Of a DNA stretch of 64,000 nucleotides, positions 51,503 through 63,471 are shown piece by piece. How positions within the stretch are numbered: position 1 is the stretch's first letter; each line of letters opens with the position of its first letter. The stretch is from positions 62,001 through 126,000 of the IMG/VR virus record IMGVR_UViG_3300017786_003484; one strand, 5' to 3'. A program made the translations under genes and the position numbers. The notes beneath the pieces are model-generated. The model ran no database searches and was not told the origin of the DNA. It saw only the letters and a list, made by a program, of their open reading frames with translations.

Positions 51503-52441
51503 ATGACACAGAAAATTAGATGGGTTCTAGCACATGAGCCAATTGAATTATTTCTAAGAGCGGCAAAAGTTTTCGCATCAGAAGTTAATGCAAAAGCAGA
51601 AGGCGCACTAGATATTGAAGTTATGACAATGAATGAGTATTCTGCAAAGTATAATAACGGTGTTGTTGTTACTAAGCACGAACTTGTTGATATGATTAAC
51701 AGAGGCGACATTGAAATGTCCCAAACATACACAGTAGACATTGGCGAATATGATCACGAATTCCGTGCATTAGATATGCCATTCCTATTTGAGTCACACG
51801 ACCACGCAACTAAAGTGTTCGAAGGCCCAATTGGTCAGTCACTACTAGACGGATTAACAGAATCAGCTGGTGTTAAAGGTTTAGCCTTTACATACTCCGG
51901 TGGATATAGAATTATTCCTGGACAAGAAGGAATTGATACTATTGAAGATATTAGAGATCTTAAACTTCGTACTTCTTTCTCACCTGTTGCTATTGAAACA
52001 TTCAAAGCAGTTGGTGCAAACGTAGTTCCAATGGAACTAGAAGAAATGACAGATGCAATCCAAGATGCAGACATTCAAGTTGGTGAGTCTACTTACCCAC
52101 GTATCTATGCATTAGGACAAGACAGAGTTTCTAAGGTTATTAACCACACAGAACACTCATTGTTCTTAACAAGCATCTTAATCAACCAAGACTTCTTTGC
52201 AACTCTTGGTGAAGAACTACAAGGTATTGTTGTAGACGCCGCTAAAACAGCCGCTAATTACGAACGTGTAATCAGCATTGAAGACGTTGCACTTACACAA
52301 GCTAAAGCTGAAAGCGATGGCATTGAAGTTCGTAGAATGTCAACAGAAGAAAAAGCTCGTTTCAAAGCCGCTACTGCTCATGTTTATGACATGTTCCCAG
52401 AGTTAGCTGGAACAGTTAAGAAGATCCAAGATACAAAATAA
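51503..52441 (+). CDS. dctP: Second signal-less DctP-fold protein
   Basis: RGDIEM, LDMPFLFESHDH, AFTYSGGYR, DLKLRT, GANVVPM, NHTEH; SD AAGGAG directly before MTQKIRW; TATAAATA at 51391-51398. Confidence 0.88.
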   Translation: MTQKIRWVLAHEPIELFLRAAKVFASEVNAKAEGALDIEVMTMNEYSAKYNNGVVVTKHELVDMINRGDIEMSQTYTVDIGEYDHEFRALDMPFLFESHDHATKVFEGPIGQSLLDGLTESAGVKGLAFTYSGGYRIIPGQEGIDTIEDIRDLKLRTSFSPVAIETFKAVGANVVPMELEEMTDAIQDADIQVGESTYPRIYALGQDRVSKVINHTEHSLFLTSILINQDFFATLGEELQGIVVDAAKTAANYERVISIEDVALTQAKAESDGIEVRRMSTEEKARFKAATAHVYDMFPELAGTVKKIQDTK

Positions 52442-55156: not shown

Positions 55157-55924
55157 ATGAAAAAGACCATTGATGTGTATGACGGGCTTATTAGTAAAGA
55201 ACTACAACACGAAATACACGAATATGCACTTAATCATACATGGTATAGTGCATTACGTCATAACTGTGATTATGATGCTACAGTAGATCCACTAAACAAT
55301 GAATTAGGCGAAGGCGAACGAGGAATTATCCGACATCCGTATGGTAATAGTACTGATATGGTAAAAACTAGGCATCCGTTAATCTATAAACTGTTTCAAG
55401 AAATAAATGATAAAGTACTAGGAGGCAAAGCAGATATTGATGGTATAAAAGAAGATATTGGCGGACTTCGAAGTGGCAAGAACGTTTATAGTGACGGACA
55501 AAACTTCTTCCAAAAATACGATTATGACAATACTATTAAAGGTTGGACATGTTATATGAATGCAAAATGTCAGGCTCCAAAGAAATCATTGAAACCAGGA
55601 ATAGGATACATTCACAGAGATAGCGGCCCTGATTACGTTGATAAGACTAACTATGCAACTGTACTATTTGTTACTAATCCAAAATGGTTGCCAAGTTGGG
55701 GCGGAGAATATAACTTTTTTGGAGATGATTTAGATGGTGCTGAAATACATTCTAAGTACGGCTATCCCATAGGATTTCCAACAAACATTGTTGGTCATAA
55801 ACCAGGTAGAATAATTGTATATAGACACGATCAAAATCATATAAGTCTTCGTATAGCACCAGATGCTGAAGGAATGCCTGTTAGGGTGGCATTTAGGGTA
55901 AACTTGAATGATGATAATGAATAA
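55157..55924 (+). CDS. 2OG-Fe(II) oxygenase
   Basis: IHRDSG (HxD), TVLF..NPKW..SWGGE, KPGRIIVY....H, RVAF. Confidence 0.85.
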   Translation: MKKTIDVYDGLISKELQHEIHEYALNHTWYSALRHNCDYDATVDPLNNELGEGERGIIRHPYGNSTDMVKTRHPLIYKLFQEINDKVLGGKADIDGIKEDIGGLRSGKNVYSDGQNFFQKYDYDNTIKGWTCYMNAKCQAPKKSLKPGIGYIHRDSGPDYVDKTNYATVLFVTNPKWLPSWGGEYNFFGDDLDGAEIHSKYGYPIGFPTNIVGHKPGRIIVYRHDQNHISLRIAPDAEGMPVRVAFRVNLNDDNE

Positions 55925-55973
55925 TTAGAAAGTAACATTAGTTACATACACACACAGAAAAGGAGACATAACA

Positions 55974-56255
55974 ATGTCTGATACAATCAAAAACTATAAT
56001 GATGCTATGAGTGCATCATTCCCTAAGGTAACATTCAATAAGAATGGATACGAAATCCGCACACAAGTTCTTGAAATGGCAAAAGAACAAGAATGGAATG
56101 ACTTTCATGCTAAACTTCAAGCATGGGAACAAACAGTGGTGCGTGATCCAGACACATCAGAGGTAGTATCAACAACTTTATTACCTTCAGTCCCAGGCGT
56201 ATCCGCAATTCTTGAGACCGCTGAAGAGTTTTATAACTTCATTAATAAGAAATAA
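55974..56255 (+). CDS. Small phage hypothetical protein
   Basis: KNGYEIRTQVLEMAK...ILETAEEFYNFI; SD AGGAG. Confidence 0.75.
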   Translation: MSDTIKNYNDAMSASFPKVTFNKNGYEIRTQVLEMAKEQEWNDFHAKLQAWEQTVVRDPDTSEVVSTTLLPSVPGVSAILETAEEFYNFINKK

Positions 56256-56369
56256 AACTTTTAAAACAACTCTGCCATCTTTAGTAGATTAGCAGTAGAA
56301 ACTGACGGTAGCTAGAAATCCGATTACAAAAAAAGTAGCATTATAAAAGGGGTGGTTACCAAATAAACC

Positions 56370-56419: not shown

Positions 56420-57058
56420 ATGCTATCAACATATGCAAATAAACAAAATACTCATCTTGTAATAGATACAACAACTAATGGAATATTAATTGCAGTACAT
56501 AGCAACGTTGTTGCGAATGCAATATGTTTTAAAATATTGAATACAGAAGCAATGTCTATTAGGCTAGTAGATTTCAACGAGGAAATAAATCCATTGCTTA
56601 AACCACAGTTTAATGAGTCTAGTAATTTTATATTAACTAAAGTTGGACACAACTTAACACCTCAATCAACAGCAAATGTTGGACAACTTGTAAAAAGTAC
56701 AGATGGCAATGGCCGTTTTGGTGTAGCTAAAATGTCTGAAGTAACAGATGAGTGGATAGCATTAAGAAAGAAAGCACATAATATCAAAGAAGTTATAGCA
56801 AGTAGCGATCTTCGAGTTCTTAGATCAGCAACACCGAGCAAAAAGTTCTTTGGAGACACTATTACCTTTCCTTTTATTAAAAAAGAACTTGATAAATGTA
56901 ATCCACAGGAAGATCAATACACAGATGCTATTCGAGAATGGGCAAATATAGTAAATGTTCCTGTAAAAAAAGGATTTGAAATGCTATCAGCAGAAAGCAA
57001 TAATATTACTCATTTGGTTAATAATTCAAGAATATTTTGGAGTAAAAAATGTCTTTAA
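56420..57058 (+). CDS. Hypothetical protein, paralog of 58079-58798
   Basis: Shares ML.T..N..N..LID and EL.KC.P.EDQYT...EWA with the 58079 ORF. Confidence 0.7.
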   Translation: MLSTYANKQNTHLVIDTTTNGILIAVHSNVVANAICFKILNTEAMSIRLVDFNEEINPLLKPQFNESSNFILTKVGHNLTPQSTANVGQLVKSTDGNGRFGVAKMSEVTDEWIALRKKAHNIKEVIASSDLRVLRSATPSKKFFGDTITFPFIKKELDKCNPQEDQYTDAIREWANIVNVPVKKGFEMLSAESNNITHLVNNSRIFWSKKCL

Positions 57059-58086
57059 ATTATGCTTTTAGTACTAAATTAAAACATGGTAGTGAATATG
57101 CTAAGAAAGACATTGCTGTTTTTCGTTCTCTTTATCATATGGATCCAGATCCATTTTTAGTTGATAGAACTGACTCTGTGGTCTTTCCTTTCTCAGAAAA
57201 CAATTATTTTCCAATGATACAACCGTTATCTAATGTTATGAGTTGGGAAGAATGTACAAAAGAGAGAGTTGAAGAACTAATATCCTTTGACAAAGAACTT
57301 TATGTTATGTGGAGCGGAGGAATAGATAGTACATTAATGCTTTTATCTTTTATGAAATATAGTAATATGAATAATGTTACAATAGTTTTAAACATGGACT
57401 CAATTAAAGAATATCCTTATTTTTATAAAAGGTTTATAGCTCAATGTAATTATAAATTACTGTCAACTGAACAATTAATGAATAATGCATTGCTAAATGA
57501 CATCAATGGATTAATAGTATCAGCCGAACATGCTGATCAGTTAGTTGGATCTCCTTTGGCTCAGTTACTTGCAACAACATCAGGTAGAACAATGCTTGGT
57601 CTTCCATTTGATGAAGAAAATTTCAGCAAATTTTTAACAAACTTAAATGTTCCAGTACATCATATTGATACAATAATGGAACTCTATAACATTAGTATTA
57701 AAAACAGTCCTCGTCCAATTAAGAATATGTGGGATCTCTGTTGGTGGCATGGATTTAACTTTAAATGGCAAACCATCTACATGAAACTGGCTATTAGAAT
57801 AAAAAATCCTTTGAATCTTTTAACTTTCTACTCTTCGGTAAACTTTCAAAATACCAGTATACACCAAGAAGGTAATACACTTGATCTAAAGAAAGTTTTT
57901 AAAGATATAATCGTTAATTATACCGAAGATACTGAATACCTAAGAAAAGAAAAATTTGCATCTTCAACATTATATTATGGACTAACCTCTTCGACAGGAT
58001 TAGACAAAAATTGGAATAAAATTAATGTTGATATGATTGAATACTATAATAAAGATAACACTATAAAGGAAATAATGAATGCTTGA
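57049..58086 (+). CDS. PP-loop ATP pyrophosphatase (asparagine-synthetase C-domain-like, no glutaminase domain)
   Basis: VMWSGGIDST PP-loop; IVSAEHADQLVG resembles AsnB GeGaDelFgG. Confidence 0.8.
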   Translation: MSLNYAFSTKLKHGSEYAKKDIAVFRSLYHMDPDPFLVDRTDSVVFPFSENNYFPMIQPLSNVMSWEECTKERVEELISFDKELYVMWSGGIDSTLMLLSFMKYSNMNNVTIVLNMDSIKEYPYFYKRFIAQCNYKLLSTEQLMNNALLNDINGLIVSAEHADQLVGSPLAQLLATTSGRTMLGLPFDEENFSKFLTNLNVPVHHIDTIMELYNISIKNSPRPIKNMWDLCWWHGFNFKWQTIYMKLAIRIKNPLNLLTFYSSVNFQNTSIHQEGNTLDLKKVFKDIIVNYTEDTEYLRKEKFASSTLYYGLTSSTGLDKNWNKINVDMIEYYNKDNTIKEIMNA

Positions 58087-58798
58087 TACTTTTAGCAATA
58101 GAAAAAATGTTACAATGATGCTTATAGACCAAGAAGATTTCAGTATATTAACTGTTACATCAAGTGTCTCGGTACTTAATGCATTGTCAGAAGGTTTTGA
58201 TAACTCTGTACCTGTACTTGGAAGAATAACAAATCCTGATGCGTTAAAAGCACTAAGAACTTATAATCAATCAGCTTCTCAAGCTCTGTTAGCAAATGTT
58301 GGACTTGATGATCTAACTCAAGAAATTGAAACCAAAGCAAATTGGGACACGATTGGACTAACACCAATTAGCTTTGGCTTAAAGCCAATGAACGAAAAAA
58401 CAGAAGGGTTTGTATTAAAAAGAAAGATTGCAAATAGAAGACAAAATGTACTGTCTCAAATTGAATCTAAATTAGAACGTTATGCTAGTCGAGTTATTAA
58501 TTCTTCTCTTGATGATATTTTTATTCCTTATATGTCAAACGAACTTAGTAAATGTAAACCAGATGAAGACCAATATACCAATCCTGTAATTGAATGGGCA
58601 ATAGCATCAGGTTTAGATGTAAAACAAGCATATCATGAGTTAAGCATGGTAACAAGTTCTGCTAATTTAACTACTATGCGTCTTCATGCTCATTGGAGGT
58701 TCTTTGTAAATCAAGTTAATAAGCTCGACTTTCAAGTTGACGGAATACTAGAAAAAGTTATTGCTGATGCTGAACTAAAACTTAGGTCTGGGCTATAA
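58079..58798 (+). CDS. Hypothetical protein, paralog of 56420-57058
   Basis: ELSKCKPDEDQYTNPVIEWA vs ELDKCNPQEDQYTDAIREWA. Confidence 0.7.
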   Translation: MLDTFSNRKNVTMMLIDQEDFSILTVTSSVSVLNALSEGFDNSVPVLGRITNPDALKALRTYNQSASQALLANVGLDDLTQEIETKANWDTIGLTPISFGLKPMNEKTEGFVLKRKIANRRQNVLSQIESKLERYASRVINSSLDDIFIPYMSNELSKCKPDEDQYTNPVIEWAIASGLDVKQAYHELSMVTSSANLTTMRLHAHWRFFVNQVNKLDFQVDGILEKVIADAELKLRSGL

Positions 58799-58823: not shown

Positions 58824-58852
58824 TTGACTATTGGATACAGTTATGTTATATT
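58824..58852 (+). promoter_or_regulatory. Early promoter of the AAAGGTTGAC family
   Basis: A-tract-GG-TTGACT-17 nt-TATATT. Confidence 0.65.
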
Positions 58853-58901
58853 AGTAACATAGTTAGAAAGACTCTAACTACTTTTGATAAAAGGAAATTA
58901 A

Positions 58902-59198
58902 ATGTCAAAATCTACAACGTCAATCAGATCATTCGATCTAGAAACGAAGCAAGGCAAACTTTTTAACGCATTGGTTATTGAAAAGCAGGCCCTAACAAAG
59001 TCAGCAATTAAGAATAGATTCGGTATTGCTAATCCAACAGCGACTGTTTCTAACATTCGTCAAAGAGGATATGCTATCTATGCAAACCAACGTAAAGCCG
59101 GTAATGGCGTACATGTAACTGAGTATTCACACGGTGCTCCGTCACGTCGTATGGTTGCTTTGGCCTATAAGGCTCAGGGAATGGGTATTACTGTTTAA
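58902..59198 (+). CDS. Winged-helix DNA-binding protein
   Basis: LTKSAIKNRFGIANPTATVSNIRQRGYAIY HTH-wing pattern. Confidence 0.65.
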   Translation: MSKSTTSIRSFDLETKQGKLFNALVIEKQALTKSAIKNRFGIANPTATVSNIRQRGYAIYANQRKAGNGVHVTEYSHGAPSRRMVALAYKAQGMGITV

Positions 59199-59221
59199 TC
59201 AGTAGTTTCTAAAACTGACTA

Positions 59222-59249
59222 AAAATAGGGGGAGAAATCCCCCTATTTT
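59222..59249 (+). terminator. Intrinsic (possibly bidirectional) terminator
   Basis: AAAATAGGGGGA-GAAA-TCCCCCTATTTT. Confidence 0.88.
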
Positions 59250-59295
59250 CTTGACATAAATATCAGGCATTGAATGCAAGAAAGAGAGTATACAC

Positions 59296-60156
59296 ATGTC
59301 AAAACGTATCCTAATTATGGGATTACCAGGATCTGGAAAAACAACTTTAGCTGAGAAGTTAAAAACTTATATAGAGGCAGAAGCCGGTATAAGTTCAGCA
59401 CCATTAGATAAACAAATTAGAGTAATTGAATCTCCTAAACTAGACGAATATAAATGTACAGTAGATTGGTTCAACGCAGACGAAATCCGTAAGAAGTTTG
59501 ACGACTGGGATTTTAGTCATACTGGACGCATTAGACAAAGTATTCGTATGTTTGATTTATCTCAAGAATCAGATGCTGATTTTGTTATTTGCGACTTTGT
59601 TGCACCGTTAGTAGAAATGAGAAACAATTTTAAAGCAGATTGGACAATTTGGATTGATACAATTAAAGAAGGTAGATATGAAGATACCAATAAAGCATTT
59701 ATTGAACCTGAGGTATATGACTTCCGTGTACCAGAACAAGATTGTGAAAAATGGGCTAGATATATTTGCGACAGAATTGTAAAAGATGAAAGAAGACCTA
59801 TGTTTGACTGGAGGAAAGAAACAGTACAGATGCTAGGCCGTTGGCAACCATGGCATGATGGACATCGTGCATTATTTGAAAGACTAATTCAACGTACAGG
59901 ACAGGTTGTAATACAAATTAGAGATGTACAAGGATGGGAAGGTTCTAATCCTTTTGAAATTGATCAAGTTAAACGTTTTATTAAAGCAGACTTAGATCCA
60001 TTGTACCAAGGACAATATGAAATTCAGATTGTTCCTAATATTGTACATATTGGCTGGGGTAGAGGTGTAGGTTATACGTCAGGAGAAGAAACCTTTGACG
60101 AATCAGTAACAGAAATTTCTGCAACTAATATTAGAAAAGGAATGGGACTAAAGTAG
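59296..60156 (+). CDS. Adenylylsulfate-kinase-like P-loop domain fused to a HIGH-motif nucleotidyltransferase domain
   Basis: IMGLPGSGKTT, NADEIR, DFS..GR.RQ, ICDFVAP (CysC-like); C-terminal GRWQPWHDGH. Confidence 0.8.
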   Translation: MSKRILIMGLPGSGKTTLAEKLKTYIEAEAGISSAPLDKQIRVIESPKLDEYKCTVDWFNADEIRKKFDDWDFSHTGRIRQSIRMFDLSQESDADFVICDFVAPLVEMRNNFKADWTIWIDTIKEGRYEDTNKAFIEPEVYDFRVPEQDCEKWARYICDRIVKDERRPMFDWRKETVQMLGRWQPWHDGHRALFERLIQRTGQVVIQIRDVQGWEGSNPFEIDQVKRFIKADLDPLYQGQYEIQIVPNIVHIGWGRGVGYTSGEETFDESVTEISATNIRKGMGLK

Positions 60157-61780: not shown

Positions 61781-62683
61781 ATGAAGATATTACCCTTAGC
61801 CACGATCGCAGTATTCGTGGGCATCTTTACGGCGAATGCTGGTGAAAAACTAGCACTTCCGTCTACAGAAGGTGTAGACATTACAACATATGGTGAAGTC
61901 CGAGCATATGTTGAAACTTCGACTGTTAATGATGTTGATACAGCAATTAAAACATCAGACAGTAAAATAGGACTAAAATTTAAGACTAAAGAACCAGTAT
62001 ATGTCTTTGGAGAAATGTCAGCTAATGTTGATCTATCCTCAGACGGAGCAGACGATGTAACAACTCGGTTTGGTTATATTGGCGTAGGTACCAATGCATT
62101 GGGAGAAATTTCACTTGGACGTACAATGAGCATTATGGATTCATTTGTTGATAAAGCAGATGTGTTTATGGGTGCAGGAAATCAAGGAGTTCAGAAGACT
62201 CCTTTTACTATGAATAACAGTTTGAAGTATACTGGTAGTTTTAGCGGAGTCGATGTTGGCTTTCAAACACAAATGACTGATGATGCACAAGACCATGACT
62301 TGGATTTATATCAAATTGGTTTAGGCTACAAAGGCATTGGTGTTGCATATGCAAGAGATGAAATTAATTCATCTGACTACTATGGCTTGGGTGTTTCTCA
62401 AAAGTTTGGAAAAATTGGAGCATATGCTAGTGTATCGGTATTAGATGATGATACACAAGCAAATGATGCAGTTGGATATGAACTTGCTGGTTCATATGAT
62501 TTAAACGAAAAACTAACACTACAAGGCGGTTGGCAAGATACTGATGTTACATCAGATGACGGTAACTTGACAATTGAATCACAGTATGAGATTGCAACTC
62601 AATCAGTATTTTTTACTAATATTGATTATGACTTAACAACAGAAGATGCAACTCTTCGAACAGGTCTTAGCTTTACATTCTAA
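61781..62683 (+). CDS. Gram-negative outer-membrane porin
   Basis: Signal peptide, ITTYGEVR, SKIGLK, RFGYIG..T..LGEISLGR, NSLKYTGSFSG, alternating beta strands, C-terminal Phe (LSFTF). Confidence 0.9.
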   Translation: MKILPLATIAVFVGIFTANAGEKLALPSTEGVDITTYGEVRAYVETSTVNDVDTAIKTSDSKIGLKFKTKEPVYVFGEMSANVDLSSDGADDVTTRFGYIGVGTNALGEISLGRTMSIMDSFVDKADVFMGAGNQGVQKTPFTMNNSLKYTGSFSGVDVGFQTQMTDDAQDHDLDLYQIGLGYKGIGVAYARDEINSSDYYGLGVSQKFGKIGAYASVSVLDDDTQANDAVGYELAGSYDLNEKLTLQGGWQDTDVTSDDGNLTIESQYEIATQSVFFTNIDYDLTTEDATLRTGLSFTF

Positions 62684-62748: not shown

Positions 62749-63471
62749 TTGCCACTAATAGAGCAATATCCTAATTATAAATTCTTAGAAACCGTGTTTA
62801 GACTCGGACATCTAGATAAACTCAAAAAAGCATTTTATGACAGCAAGCCAGTATGGAACCAAAGAGCAACAAAAACATTCTTTGCTGATTGCGGCTGGTA
62901 TAAGTATCCTTATTGTTGTTTCGTTCCTGGTTATGAAGAATTAAATGCTCCAAACGTTATTGGTTTACTGCAATCTGAGATATACAATGCAACAGTTAAC
63001 ATTGTTAAAGAACTGTGGGTAGCACTATATAAAGAAACTGACGAAGAATGGATGCCTTTCGGAGCAGAACTTAACTTAGTAAATCCTGGCAGGAAAATTC
63101 AACCTCACACAGATAATCATTTCTATAGCAATTATGCAACTAGATGTCATGTTGTATTAGAAACTAATAGTAATGTAGAATTTACATTTGGAAACAACGA
63201 ATCACCAACATTTAATGTAGGACATTCTTTTATTTTCAACAATAAAAGAAGGCACGAAATATGCAATTTTGGAAGCACAAACAGAGTTCATTTAGTAGTA
63301 GATTTTTTACCCAAGAACATATTTCCTTATACAGAAAGAACTCTTGCTCCGTTTGGTACTGACAACTCGTGTCATATCATTAATACTATACGTTCAAGAG
63401 ATCATCCTTTGCATAATAAATATGTAGACTATGTTGATAATATACCTATACCTAAAAGAAAAACTATATGA
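62749..63471 (+). CDS. Aspartyl/asparaginyl beta-hydroxylase-like 2OG-Fe(II) oxygenase
   Basis: PGRKIQPHTD, RCHVVL.TN, FNNKRRHEI.N.G...RVHLVVD; TTG start with SD GAGGAGG. Confidence 0.8.
   Translation: MPLIEQYPNYKFLETVFRLGHLDKLKKAFYDSKPVWNQRATKTFFADCGWYKYPYCCFVPGYEELNAPNVIGLLQSEIYNATVNIVKELWVALYKETDEEWMPFGAELNLVNPGRKIQPHTDNHFYSNYATRCHVVLETNSNVEFTFGNNESPTFNVGHSFIFNNKRRHEICNFGSTNRVHLVVDFLPKNIFPYTERTLAPFGTDNSCHIINTIRSRDHPLHNKYVDYVDNIPIPKRKTI

What the first reader, a model, noticed from the sequence alone, without database searches (positions are those of the whole stretch)
56420..58798. A-B-A' module: PP-loop amide-forming enzyme flanked by two paralogous unknown proteins
B has SGGIDS and an AsnB-like motif but no glutaminase domain, the architecture of lasso cyclases and other adenylating amide ligases. 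A and A' align end to end (ML.T..N..N..LID, FG...M.E.T, P++..EL.KC.P.EDQYT...EWA) and B overlaps both neighbours, implying a heteromeric complex. It could be a protein- or peptide-modifying or tRNA/nucleotide-modifying system. No lasso precursor or peptidase is visible nearby.
Basis: partly seen in the sequence, partly recalled or inferred. Interest (0 to 1): 0.62.

Follow-up and report, generated by a model that had tools for sequence, protein, structure and literature searches.

The report
Phage amide-ligase gene paired with orphan partner
An abundant marine jumbo phage carries a stripped-down relative of asparagine synthetase that is almost always encoded right after a fast-evolving, phage-only partner protein of unknown fold. 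This two-gene unit is widespread, uncharacterised, and repeated several times in this one genome.

Summary
A (56420-57058), B (57049-58086) and A' (58079-58798) are intact, overlapping genes. A and A' are paralogues (BLASTP E 1e-17). B carries SGGIDS.

B matches no Pfam or NCBIfam family above cut-off. Its confident model (pLDDT 92) is closest to the synthetase domains of TsnB9, asparagine synthetase, beta-lactam synthetase and carbapenam synthetase (Z 10-12). It has no glutaminase domain and no conserved cysteine.

The conserved unit is an A->B pair, not A-B-A'. Of 63 A genes, 56 are followed directly by a B gene, usually with a 4-nt overlap. Three of three look-ups that started from distant A proteins found B next door. 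A and B distances co-vary (Mantel r 0.85).

Related phages carry A-B-A'-B'. This clade lost B' but keeps A' under purifying selection (dN/dS about 0.22).

A has no invariant residue and no known fold, and is confined to viruses. Bacterial B relatives pair with a cupin and an unrelated small protein instead. The genome holds at least five such partner plus PP-loop pairs.

Most likely this is a two-component, ATP-dependent amide ligase with A as the targeting partner or the substrate. The target is unknown, and a physical complex is not shown. It is not a lasso system.

The parts
56420..57058 (+). A: 212-aa member of a virus-restricted partner family. It is a divergent, C-terminally shorter member.
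   Evidence: ORF. Paralogue of A'. Its orthologue sits directly upstream of the B orthologue in L007, L015 and L179-L181. dN/dS is 0.40-0.42.
57049..58086 (+). B: 345-aa stand-alone AsnB-type (PP-loop) synthetase domain, the predicted catalytic subunit.
   Evidence: No Pfam or NCBIfam hit above cut-off. Model pLDDT 91.7. VIA Z 12.2 TsnB9, 11.2 human ASNS, 10.9 beta-lactam synthetase, 10.3 CarA, 10.0 AsnB. Twenty invariant residues in a 30-sequence alignment. dN/dS 0.09-0.17.
57313..57330 (+). PP-loop SGGIDS (B residues 89-94), the ATP pyrophosphatase signature.
   Evidence: S89-G-G-I-D-S-T95 is invariant across 30 family members.
57520..57540 (+). SAEHADQ (B residues 158-164). E160 is nearly invariant and D163 is invariant. 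It is probably the counterpart of the SGEGSDE acidic motif of AsnB; that equivalence rests on recall, not on a tool alignment.
58079..58798 (+). A': 239-aa paralogue of A. It is an orphan, because its cognate B' is absent in this clade.
   Evidence: ORF. Its orthologues in L007, L015 and L051 are followed by a 351-352-aa B'. Model pLDDT 87 with no known fold. dN/dS 0.21-0.23 in relatives that also lack B'.
58824..58852 (+). Conserved sigma-70-like promoter (TTGACT-17-TATATT with TG) that marks the downstream boundary of the module.
   Evidence: The same sequence follows the stop of B' in L007 and L051 but follows the stop of A' here, which shows a clean absence of B'. RNA-library contigs begin at 58869-58878 in four runs.
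55974..56255 (+). 93-aa gene conserved just upstream of A in 15 loci. A link to the module is not shown.
   Evidence: Cluster 5. It forms a separate RNA-library contig, 55947-56350, in four runs.
58902..60156 (+). Winged-helix gene (58902-59198) and a P-loop kinase fused to a nucleotidyltransferase-like domain (59296-60156). These are conserved downstream neighbours but form a separate unit.
   Evidence: Clusters 7 and 3 occur in 13 and 18 loci. A terminator-like hairpin lies at 59221-59250.

Best explanation
A->B is a translationally coupled two-gene module. B is a stand-alone AsnB-type synthetase domain. By inference from its fold and motifs, it binds ATP at the PP-loop, adenylates a carboxylate, and passes the acyl group to an amine or to free ammonia to form an amide. 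It does not hydrolyse glutamine. A and A' belong to a fast-evolving, phage-only, probably non-catalytic family that is inherited and diversifies together with B. I take A to be the partner that selects or presents the target. It occupies the gene position, and has roughly the size, of the N-terminal domain that AsnB-family enzymes carry and B lacks. The A-B-A' layout here derives from a tandem A-B-A'-B' by loss of B'. A' is kept under selection, so it either works with the remaining B or works alone. The target (a modified DNA base, a protein or a metabolite) is not identified.
For: B's fold is closest to AsnB-family synthetase domains. Z is 10-12.2 with 207-261 residues aligned, against Z 8.5 or less with about 150 aligned for other PP-loop enzymes (Foldseek agrees). 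The PP-loop and an acidic motif are invariant. No cysteine is invariant. Of 63 A genes, 56 have B as the next gene and 2 more have it second next; 27 pairs overlap by 4 nt. Three of three look-ups that started from distant A representatives found a B gene (E 1e-103 to 1e-111) immediately downstream. A and B pairwise distances correlate (Mantel r 0.85, 0 of 2000 permutations reach it, 33 pairs including paralogous pairs within one genome). In a 144-sequence alignment A has no residue conserved above 89%, which argues against A being an enzyme. A-B-A' without B' recurs in relatives with B at 73-87% identity, and A' there has dN/dS 0.21-0.23. The same genome has three further PP-loop paralogues, each preceded by a coupled 244-266-aa protein of a second partner family. 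Pieces of all three genes occur in contigs of four marine metatranscriptome libraries.
Against: No direct evidence of binding was obtained. A has no recognisable fold or motif that points to a role. No carboxylate or amine substrate can be named from the gene context. Bacterial B relatives lack A altogether (2 of 80 loci, both metagenome-assembled genomes) and use unrelated small upstream proteins, so A is not essential to the chemistry. Co-evolution and adjacency fit an enzyme-substrate pair equally well. B matches the Asn_synthase Pfam model only at the PP-loop.
Confidence: 0.5

Rival explanations
1. A (and A') is the protein substrate of B. B would adenylate either a small-molecule carboxylate that is then joined to A, or a carboxylate side chain of A (for example the commonly conserved Asp16/17). 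This would resemble QatC-QatB, Cap9-CdnD or lasso cyclases, with nearby cupin, 2OG-oxygenase-like and SET-domain genes adding further marks.
For: Precedent exists for a PP-loop enzyme whose unannotated neighbour is its amine substrate (PMC13376578). A evolves faster than B and co-varies with it. In this genome a SET-domain gene sits between A3 and B2, with a cupin directly upstream. Cupin or 2OG-oxygenase genes flank A-B in other loci. The best-conserved acidic position of A is Asp17, at a predicted hairpin turn.
Against: No residue of A is invariant: Asp17 is Asp in 77% and Ser in 13% of 144 sequences. The N-terminus is not conserved and lacks the Gly2 of QatB and CdnD. A is predicted to be a folded 200-240-aa protein, unlike a RiPP precursor. 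Orphan A' persists without its own B.
Confidence: 0.25
2. B is a DNA (or nucleotide) hypermodification ligase of the CmoY kind. It would amidate a carboxyl-bearing base in phage DNA, with A as the DNA-binding or targeting factor. This concerns the target and is compatible with the best explanation.
For: A phage asparagine-synthetase homologue, CmoY, ligates glycine to 5-carboxymethylcytosine in DNA, and diverse ligase clusters with unknown amines exist in phages (PMC12783734). In one lineage the A-B modules sit beside ribonucleotide reductase and a SegE-like homing endonuclease. Several paralogous ligases in one genome would fit several amine donors.
Against: The 244-kb record has no C5-methyltransferase (CmoX-like) or CmoA. 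None of the B-containing loci has a protein with C5-methyltransferase motifs. No TGT/DpdA was found for a 7-deazaguanine route. tblastn of B against 50,697 phage records found only one distant hit, so B is not close to any cultured-phage ligase. Bacterial homologues sit in cupin modules with no DNA-modification genes. The record is only 74% complete, so absences are not final.
Confidence: 0.15
3. The module is a lasso-peptide or other RiPP cyclase system.
For: Lasso cyclases are AsnB homologues, and B shares the synthetase fold.
Against: B is 345 aa, not about 600 aa. No transglutaminase-like peptidase, PqqD-like RRE or radical SAM gene lies next to it in this window. The context is a lytic T4-like jumbo phage.
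Confidence: 0.03
4. B is a tRNA/nucleotide sulfurtransferase or a QueC-like enzyme (MnmA, TtcA, LarE or QueC type), and A is unrelated to its function.
For: The weak sequence hits are to PAPS reductase, QueC and LarE. The only cultured-phage relative is annotated MnmA and lies next to tRNA genes.
Against: Those hits cover only the PP-loop. No cysteine is conserved in the family. Structural similarity to these enzymes (Z 4.8-7.4, about 130-160 residues aligned) is well below that to AsnB-type enzymes. The A-B linkage is too strict for unrelated genes.
Confidence: 0.05

Closest known systems
AsnB-family synthetase domains that form amides or lactams without using glutamine as nitrogen source: TsnB9 hydroxyamidotransferase (7ylz), beta-lactam synthetase (1jgt), carbapenam synthetase (1q15)
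   Same: B has the PP-loop and the whole synthetase-domain fold: Z 10.3-12.2 with 218-261 residues aligned. By inference it shares the chemistry of carboxylate adenylation followed by attack of a nitrogen nucleophile.
   Different: Those enzymes keep an N-terminal (often degenerate) Ntn domain in the same chain. B has only about 60 residues before the PP-loop domain. B fails the Pfam Asn_synthase threshold and is always paired with a separate A-family gene.
CmoY, the phage ATP-dependent amide ligase acting on 5-carboxymethylcytosine in DNA (PMC12783734)
   Same: It is a phage-encoded asparagine-synthetase homologue used as an amide ligase. Many paralogous clusters in phages have unknown amine substrates.
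   Different: CmoY co-occurs with CmoA and CmoX, and neither is found here. No partner like A is described. B shows no BLAST-level similarity to any cultured phage ligase.
QatC-QatB and Cap9-CdnD: a QueC-like PP-loop enzyme plus a partner protein that is its amine substrate (PMC13376578)
   Same: A PP-loop enzyme is encoded beside an unannotated partner with which it forms a functional pair.
   Different: B has the AsnB-type fold, not the QueC type (Z 4.8 to Cap9), and has no zinc cysteines. A lacks the conserved Gly2 N-terminal tail. PADLOC models do not match.
Lasso peptide cyclase (C protein)
   Same: It is an AsnB-derived ATP-dependent amide-forming enzyme.
   Different: There is no peptidase, RRE or precursor. 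B is half the size, and the context is a phage.
Bacterial module of cupin + small protein + B relative (Aquimarina, Tenacibaculum, Neolewinella, Bernardetia and others; uncharacterised)
   Same: It belongs to the same B family (25-31% identity). A small gene lies directly upstream of B in the same way. The cupin is homologous to the phage cupin that precedes A3 in this genome (E 8e-15).
   Different: The small upstream protein (127 or about 165 aa) shows no detectable homology to A (hhalign probability below 3%). A itself is essentially virus-only.

Membership tests
Asparagine synthetase B / AsnB superfamily | PP-loop SGGxDS ATP pyrophosphatase motif | tested here: met
   SGGIDS at residues 89-94, invariant in 30 relatives.
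Asparagine synthetase B / AsnB superfamily | Fold of the C-terminal synthetase domain | tested here: met
   VIA Z 10.0-12.2 to AsnB, ASNS, beta-LS, CarA and TsnB9 over 207-261 residues, clearly above other PP-loop enzymes. Foldseek's top hits are TsnB9, CarA and AsnB.
Asparagine synthetase B / AsnB superfamily | N-terminal Ntn glutaminase domain with catalytic Cys1 | tested here: not met
   B is 345 aa, and its model aligns only to the synthetase domain plus the linker just before it, chain residues about 132-155 onward. A and A' begin with Met-Leu, and their model gives no Ntn-fold hit.
Asparagine synthetase B / AsnB superfamily | Sequence match to Pfam PF00733 above the gathering score | tested here: not met
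   No Pfam hit at E 0.1 or better. The six-frame PF00733 search of the genome reported no match at the B locus (119049-120086). Its four sub-threshold hits (at most 16 bits, cut-off 21) fall on other PP-loop genes and cover only the PP-loop region, model positions 17-52.
Asparagine synthetase B / AsnB superfamily | Acidic motif after the third strand (SGEGSDE in E. coli AsnB, as recalled) | tested here: inconclusive
   The B family has VSGEHADQ / SAEHADQ, with E160 nearly invariant and D163 invariant. The equivalence to AsnB residues rests on recall, not on a tool alignment.
Lasso peptide cyclase system | Adjacent leader peptidase (transglutaminase-like) and RRE (PqqD-like) | tested here: not met
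   Pfam and PHROG scans of the neighbours found none. The gene tables of related loci show none.
Lasso peptide cyclase system | Short precursor peptide gene nearby | tested here: inconclusive
   Only ORFs of 50 aa or more were listed, and none looks like a precursor. Shorter ORFs were not surveyed.
CmoA/CmoX/CmoY DNA hypermodification | Co-occurrence with Cx-SAM synthase CmoA and C5-methyltransferase homologue CmoX | tested here: not met
   PF00145 and TIGR00740 are absent from the 244-kb record, which is 74% complete. No protein with C5-methyltransferase motifs occurs in the viral loci fetched up to then, L007-L091, or in the phage's own genome record.
QueC-like protein-conjugating enzymes (Cap9, QatC) | QueC fold with zinc-binding cysteines, and a partner with a conserved Gly2 N-terminal tail | tested here: not met
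   No invariant Cys. Z is only 4.8 to Cap9. The A N-termini are variable and begin Met-Leu here. No PADLOC match.
PP-loop sulfurtransferases (MnmA, TtcA/TtuA, LarE) | Catalytic or Fe-S-binding cysteines | tested here: not met
   B has three Cys (residues 69, 133, 231), and none is conserved in the family.
A-B pair as a physical heteromer | Direct or predicted interface between A and B | not testable with these tools
   No interface evidence was obtained. Only genetic linkage and co-variation are available. Pull-down or co-crystallisation is needed.

The most novel reading that the evidence does not exclude
Phages, and in a different form bacteria, may carry a previously undescribed class of modular amide ligases. 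A constant, minimal AsnB-type catalytic subunit would be paired with an interchangeable, rapidly diversifying partner protein that dictates what gets modified. Oxygenase, cupin or SET enzymes often accompany the pair. One marine jumbo phage deploys at least five such pairs from two partner families, which implies a whole repertoire of unknown covalent modifications of DNA, proteins or metabolites during infection.
Probability: 0.3. Interest if true: 0.8.

Novelty: new variant of a known kind. Interest (0 to 1): 0.57.

Why it matters
The B family is large. At least 472 IMG/VR loci encode a relative, ESM Atlas clusters nearest to B hold about 800 and 700 members, and about 96 bacterial loci from species-representative genomes carry one. 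The A family has 330 clusters at 50% identity. The phage itself is common in seawater: the 3.4-kb stretch is held in full by 14 DNA runs from 13 studies.

Neither family has a Pfam, NCBIfam, PHROG or PADLOC model, and among 50,697 cultured-phage records only one distant B relative exists, mis-annotated as MnmA. Showing what the pair makes would assign function to thousands of 'hypothetical' genes. Given the CmoY precedent, it could also reveal new DNA or protein modifications that phages use during infection.

Tried and rejected
- **Family scans.** Pfam, NCBIfam, PHROG and PADLOC scans of A, B and A' gave nothing for A and A', and only PP-loop-level hits for B.
- **PDB by sequence.** Searching with B alone and with a 30-sequence profile gave only PP-loop matches.
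- **Fold searches with the A' model.** Foldseek/PDB, VIA wide, ESM Atlas and BFVD returned only generic helical bundles or uncharacterised phage proteins. The Z 8.8 match to the PSTK C-terminal domain is a 61-residue three-helix match and I did not trust it.
- **Complex prediction on B + A.** The score was 0.00 and the tool gave no verdict. It is evidence neither for nor against binding.
- **A as a separated Ntn/glutaminase domain.** There is no Cys1 and no Ntn-fold match. Only the position and size analogy remains.
- **Homology of A to other partners.** hhalign of A against the bacterial small upstream proteins gave probability below 3%, and against the second partner family 4.8%.
- **CmoY route.** CmoA and CmoX are absent.
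- **7-deazaguanine DNA route.** QueC-like and QueD genes are present but TGT/DpdA and FolE are absent.
- **Fusions of A to B.** None among the top 150 A-family representatives, which are all 113-246 aa.
- **DNA-level similarity to cultured phages.** None.
- **RNA data.** The libraries are contigs only, so they show presence, not level or operon structure.
Full report
**Setting**

The window is bases 62001-126000 of a 244-kb IMG/VR virus record that CheckV estimates to be 74% complete. It encodes a tail sheath, large terminase, helicases and ribonucleotide reductase. Its terminase is closest, at about 49% identity, to PA5oct-like and other T4-related jumbo phages. GC content is about 35%. There is no DNA-level similarity to any cultured phage. 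The 3.4-kb stretch around the finding is held in full by 14 seawater or marine DNA runs from 13 studies, so this is a common marine phage.

**Observation**

Three intact + strand genes lie at the reported coordinates:
- A: 56420-57058, 212 aa
- B: 57049-58086, 345 aa
- A': 58079-58798, 239 aa

The genes overlap by 10 nt and 8 nt. B has SGGIDS at residues 89-94.

**What B is**

Sequence methods see only the PP-loop:
- Pfam gives no hit, and NCBIfam gives LarE at E 0.004.
- PHROG gives a PAPS-reductase family at E 2.6e-5.
- PDB sequence and profile searches match only 30-40 residues around the motif.
- A six-frame PF00733 search of the genome reported no match at B itself; its sub-threshold hits on other PP-loop paralogues cover only the PP-loop.

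A 30-sequence alignment of relatives gave a confident model: pLDDT 91.7, pTM 0.90. In an exhaustive structural comparison the top five chains are all AsnB-family synthetase domains:

| Chain | Z | Residues aligned |
|---|---|---|
| TsnB9 | 12.2 | 261 |
| Human asparagine synthetase | 11.2 | 207 |
| Beta-lactam synthetase | 10.9 | 218 |
| Carbapenam synthetase | 10.3 | 218 |
| E. coli AsnB | 10.0 | 225 |

All other PP-loop enzymes (FAD synthase, CysD, GMP and NAD synthetases, TilS, NcsA, LarE, Cap9) score Z 8.5 or less with about 125-165 residues aligned. Foldseek ranks the same families first.

The family has 20 invariant residues, including the PP-loop, D163 in a VSGEHADQ-type motif, and K300/K302. 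No cysteine is conserved, which argues against sulfurtransferase or QueC-type chemistry.

B is therefore a minimal AsnB-type adenylating domain without any glutaminase domain. The inferred chemistry, not shown here, is carboxylate adenylation followed by amide formation with an amine or free ammonia.

**What A is**

A and A' have no family hit in any library. The A' model is confident (pLDDT 87). It shows a small alpha/beta domain (residues about 11-105) followed by a helical bundle. It matches nothing informative in the PDB and matches only uncharacterised phage proteins in the ESM Atlas and BFVD.

A profile search over 1.84 billion representatives found 330 clusters. All of the top 150 are 113-246 aa, with no fusions. 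In a 144-sequence alignment no position exceeds 89% conservation, and the best acidic position, Asp17, is Asp in 77%. This is the profile of a non-catalytic protein.

**The real unit is an A->B pair**

Relatives of B were collected from metagenomes (53 proteins) and IMG/VR (at least 472 loci, 79 fetched). ORF calling and iterative HMM searches then defined 63 A-family and 123 B-family genes.
- Of the 63 A genes, 56 have B as the next gene on the same strand and 2 have it second next. Twenty-seven pairs overlap by exactly 4 nt.
- Apart from A' itself, the remaining A genes with no B after them are L025, L051 and L053; I did not work out why. In L025 the matching B gene is called in L026, which otherwise shows the same gene order.
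- To avoid ascertainment bias I also started from three distant A representatives. All three have a B-family gene (E 1e-103 to 1e-111) overlapping their stop codon.
- Pairwise distances of cognate A and B proteins correlate strongly: Mantel r 0.85, and none of 2000 permutations reaches it. The 33 pairs include paralogous pairs within one genome.
- In a few distant lineages a weak A-like gene lies just downstream of B instead.

**Origin of A-B-A'**

Phages with B at 58-68% identity (L007, L015) carry A-B-A'-B'. These are followed by the same winged-helix gene and kinase-nucleotidyltransferase gene as in the window. Other phages carry the A'-B' pair alone (L017-L021, L051).

In the window, a conserved promoter-like sequence (TTGACT-17-TATATT, 58824-58852) follows about 25 nt after the stop of A'. 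In L007 and L051 the same sequence follows the stop of B'. So B' is cleanly absent here.

This state is not a one-off. Contigs with B at 73-87% identity (L179-L182, including Tara Oceans data) have the same A-B-A' order with an intact A'. Across them, dN/dS is 0.21-0.23 for A', 0.09-0.17 for B and 0.40-0.42 for A. dS is near saturation, so these values are rough. The orphan A' is therefore maintained by selection. Whether it uses the remaining B or acts alone cannot be told from sequence.

**Wider pattern**

The genome has nine SGGxDS proteins. Beyond A-B it contains two further kinds of module.
- **A third A-B type.** A3 (234 aa) is followed by a 105-aa SET-domain protein and then B2 (363 aa), and a cupin lies directly upstream. 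This lies at genome positions 127212-129979.
- **A second partner family.** Three longer B paralogues (423-488 aa) are each preceded by a coupled 244-266-aa protein. These three upstream proteins are homologous to each other (E 1e-13 to 5e-29). They have no detectable homology to A.

Bacterial B relatives (25-31% identity; Aquimarina, Tenacibaculum, Neolewinella, Bernardetia, Xanthomonas and others) almost never have A: 2 of 80 loci, both MAGs. Instead they sit in a compact module. It consists of a cupin (present in 43 of 75 loci) plus a 127-aa or roughly 165-aa protein directly upstream of B. The bacterial cupin is homologous to the phage cupin (E 8e-15). The small proteins are not detectably related to A.

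The general design thus appears to be a conserved minimal ligase plus a variable upstream partner, often with a cupin or 2OG-type oxygenase nearby.

**Mechanism and rivals**

I commit to a two-component ATP-dependent amide ligase in which A is a non-catalytic targeting or presenting partner (confidence about 0.5).

| Reading | Confidence | Main points |
|---|---|---|
| A is the protein substrate | about 0.25 | Precedent in QatC-QatB and Cap9-CdnD (PMC13376578). But A lacks the conserved Gly2 tail and any invariant acceptor residue. |
| CmoY-like DNA hypermodification | about 0.15 | Suggested by PMC12783734. But the 244-kb record (74% complete) has no CmoA or CmoX and no DpdA. |
| Lasso or RiPP system | about 0.03 | Not supported. 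|
| Thiolation or QueC-like enzyme | about 0.05 | Not supported. |

**Expression**

Short contigs matching parts of A, B and A' occur in four marine metatranscriptome libraries from four studies. These are contigs only, so they do not prove transcription or operon structure. The flanking 93-aa gene and the winged-helix gene appear as discrete contigs with reproducible ends and adapter remnants. No contig bridges them to A-B-A', which is consistent with separate units.

**Novelty**

Within the literature library searched I found no description of this pair. The chemistry class is known. The minimal architecture with an obligatory orphan partner, and its multiplication within one phage, is a new variant.

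Noticed in passing
G000:C1:136790-138888, 149314-151474 and 196964-199002 (outside the window; L006, L004, L005): Three longer PP-loop paralogues (433, 488 and 423 aa) are each preceded by an overlapping 244-266-aa protein. These upstream proteins are homologous to each other (E 1e-13 to 5e-29) but not detectably to A. They form a second partner family built on the same two-gene design.
   Followed up: partly
G000:C1:127212-129979 (L092:1212-3979): A tightly packed run of cupin (217 aa), A3 (234 aa), SET-domain protein (105 aa, Pfam E 8e-11) and B2 (363 aa). A3-B2-type pairs in other phages lack the SET insertion.
   Followed up: partly
L107:4874-6921, L109:5400-7685 and about 40 other bacterial loci: An uncharacterised bacterial three-gene module of cupin, small protein (127 or about 165 aa) and B relative. 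It occurs in Bacteroidota and others, in variable genomic contexts, with no Pfam, NCBIfam or PADLOC assignment beyond the cupin.
   Followed up: partly
L121:3015-6888 (also L130, L145, L150): In Undibacterium, Comamonas and Xanthomonas genomes the B relative lies at the end of a Baseplate_J / short tail-gene block, probably a prophage or tailocin. It is again preceded by an overlapping gene of about 197 aa.
   Followed up: no
window 55947-56350 and 58869-59189: In four metatranscriptome libraries, the 93-aa gene and the winged-helix gene each form discrete contigs. Their ends are reproducible and carry sequencing-adapter remnants, which suggests short, defined and relatively abundant RNAs on either side of the module.
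   Followed up: partly
window 59296-60156: A fusion of a P-loop kinase (APS-kinase/KTI12-like) with a C-terminal nucleotidyltransferase-like domain carrying an HxGH motif (phrog_10255). It is conserved downstream of the module in 18 loci together with a 98-aa winged-helix protein, an arrangement reminiscent of NadR parts.
   Followed up: no
window 51503-52441, 61781-62683, 62749-63471; G000:C1:132269-133189: The phage encodes a DctP-type and a TctC-type solute-binding protein, a porin-like protein (Porin_4 on the L179 orthologue) and an Asp/Arg-hydroxylase-like protein near the module. These are unusual auxiliary genes.
   Followed up: no
G000:C1:183395-184021 and 202249-202629: QueC-like and QueD (PTPS) genes are present, but no TGT/DpdA or GTP cyclohydrolase I was found in the 74%-complete record.
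   Followed up: partly
L186 (Pseudomonas phage Cygsa01, PP179332.1 11421-13570): This is the only cultured phage among 50,697 records with a distant B relative. It has two PP-loop genes separated by a 90-aa gene, next to a tRNA gene, and both are annotated as MnmA. That annotation is doubtful, because the B family has no conserved cysteine.
   Followed up: no
window 55157-55924: A 255-aa gene just upstream (cluster 11) also sits next to A-B in other lineages (L024-L026). By eye it has an HxD...H pattern like 2OG-Fe(II) oxygenases, but no family model matched it.
   Followed up: no
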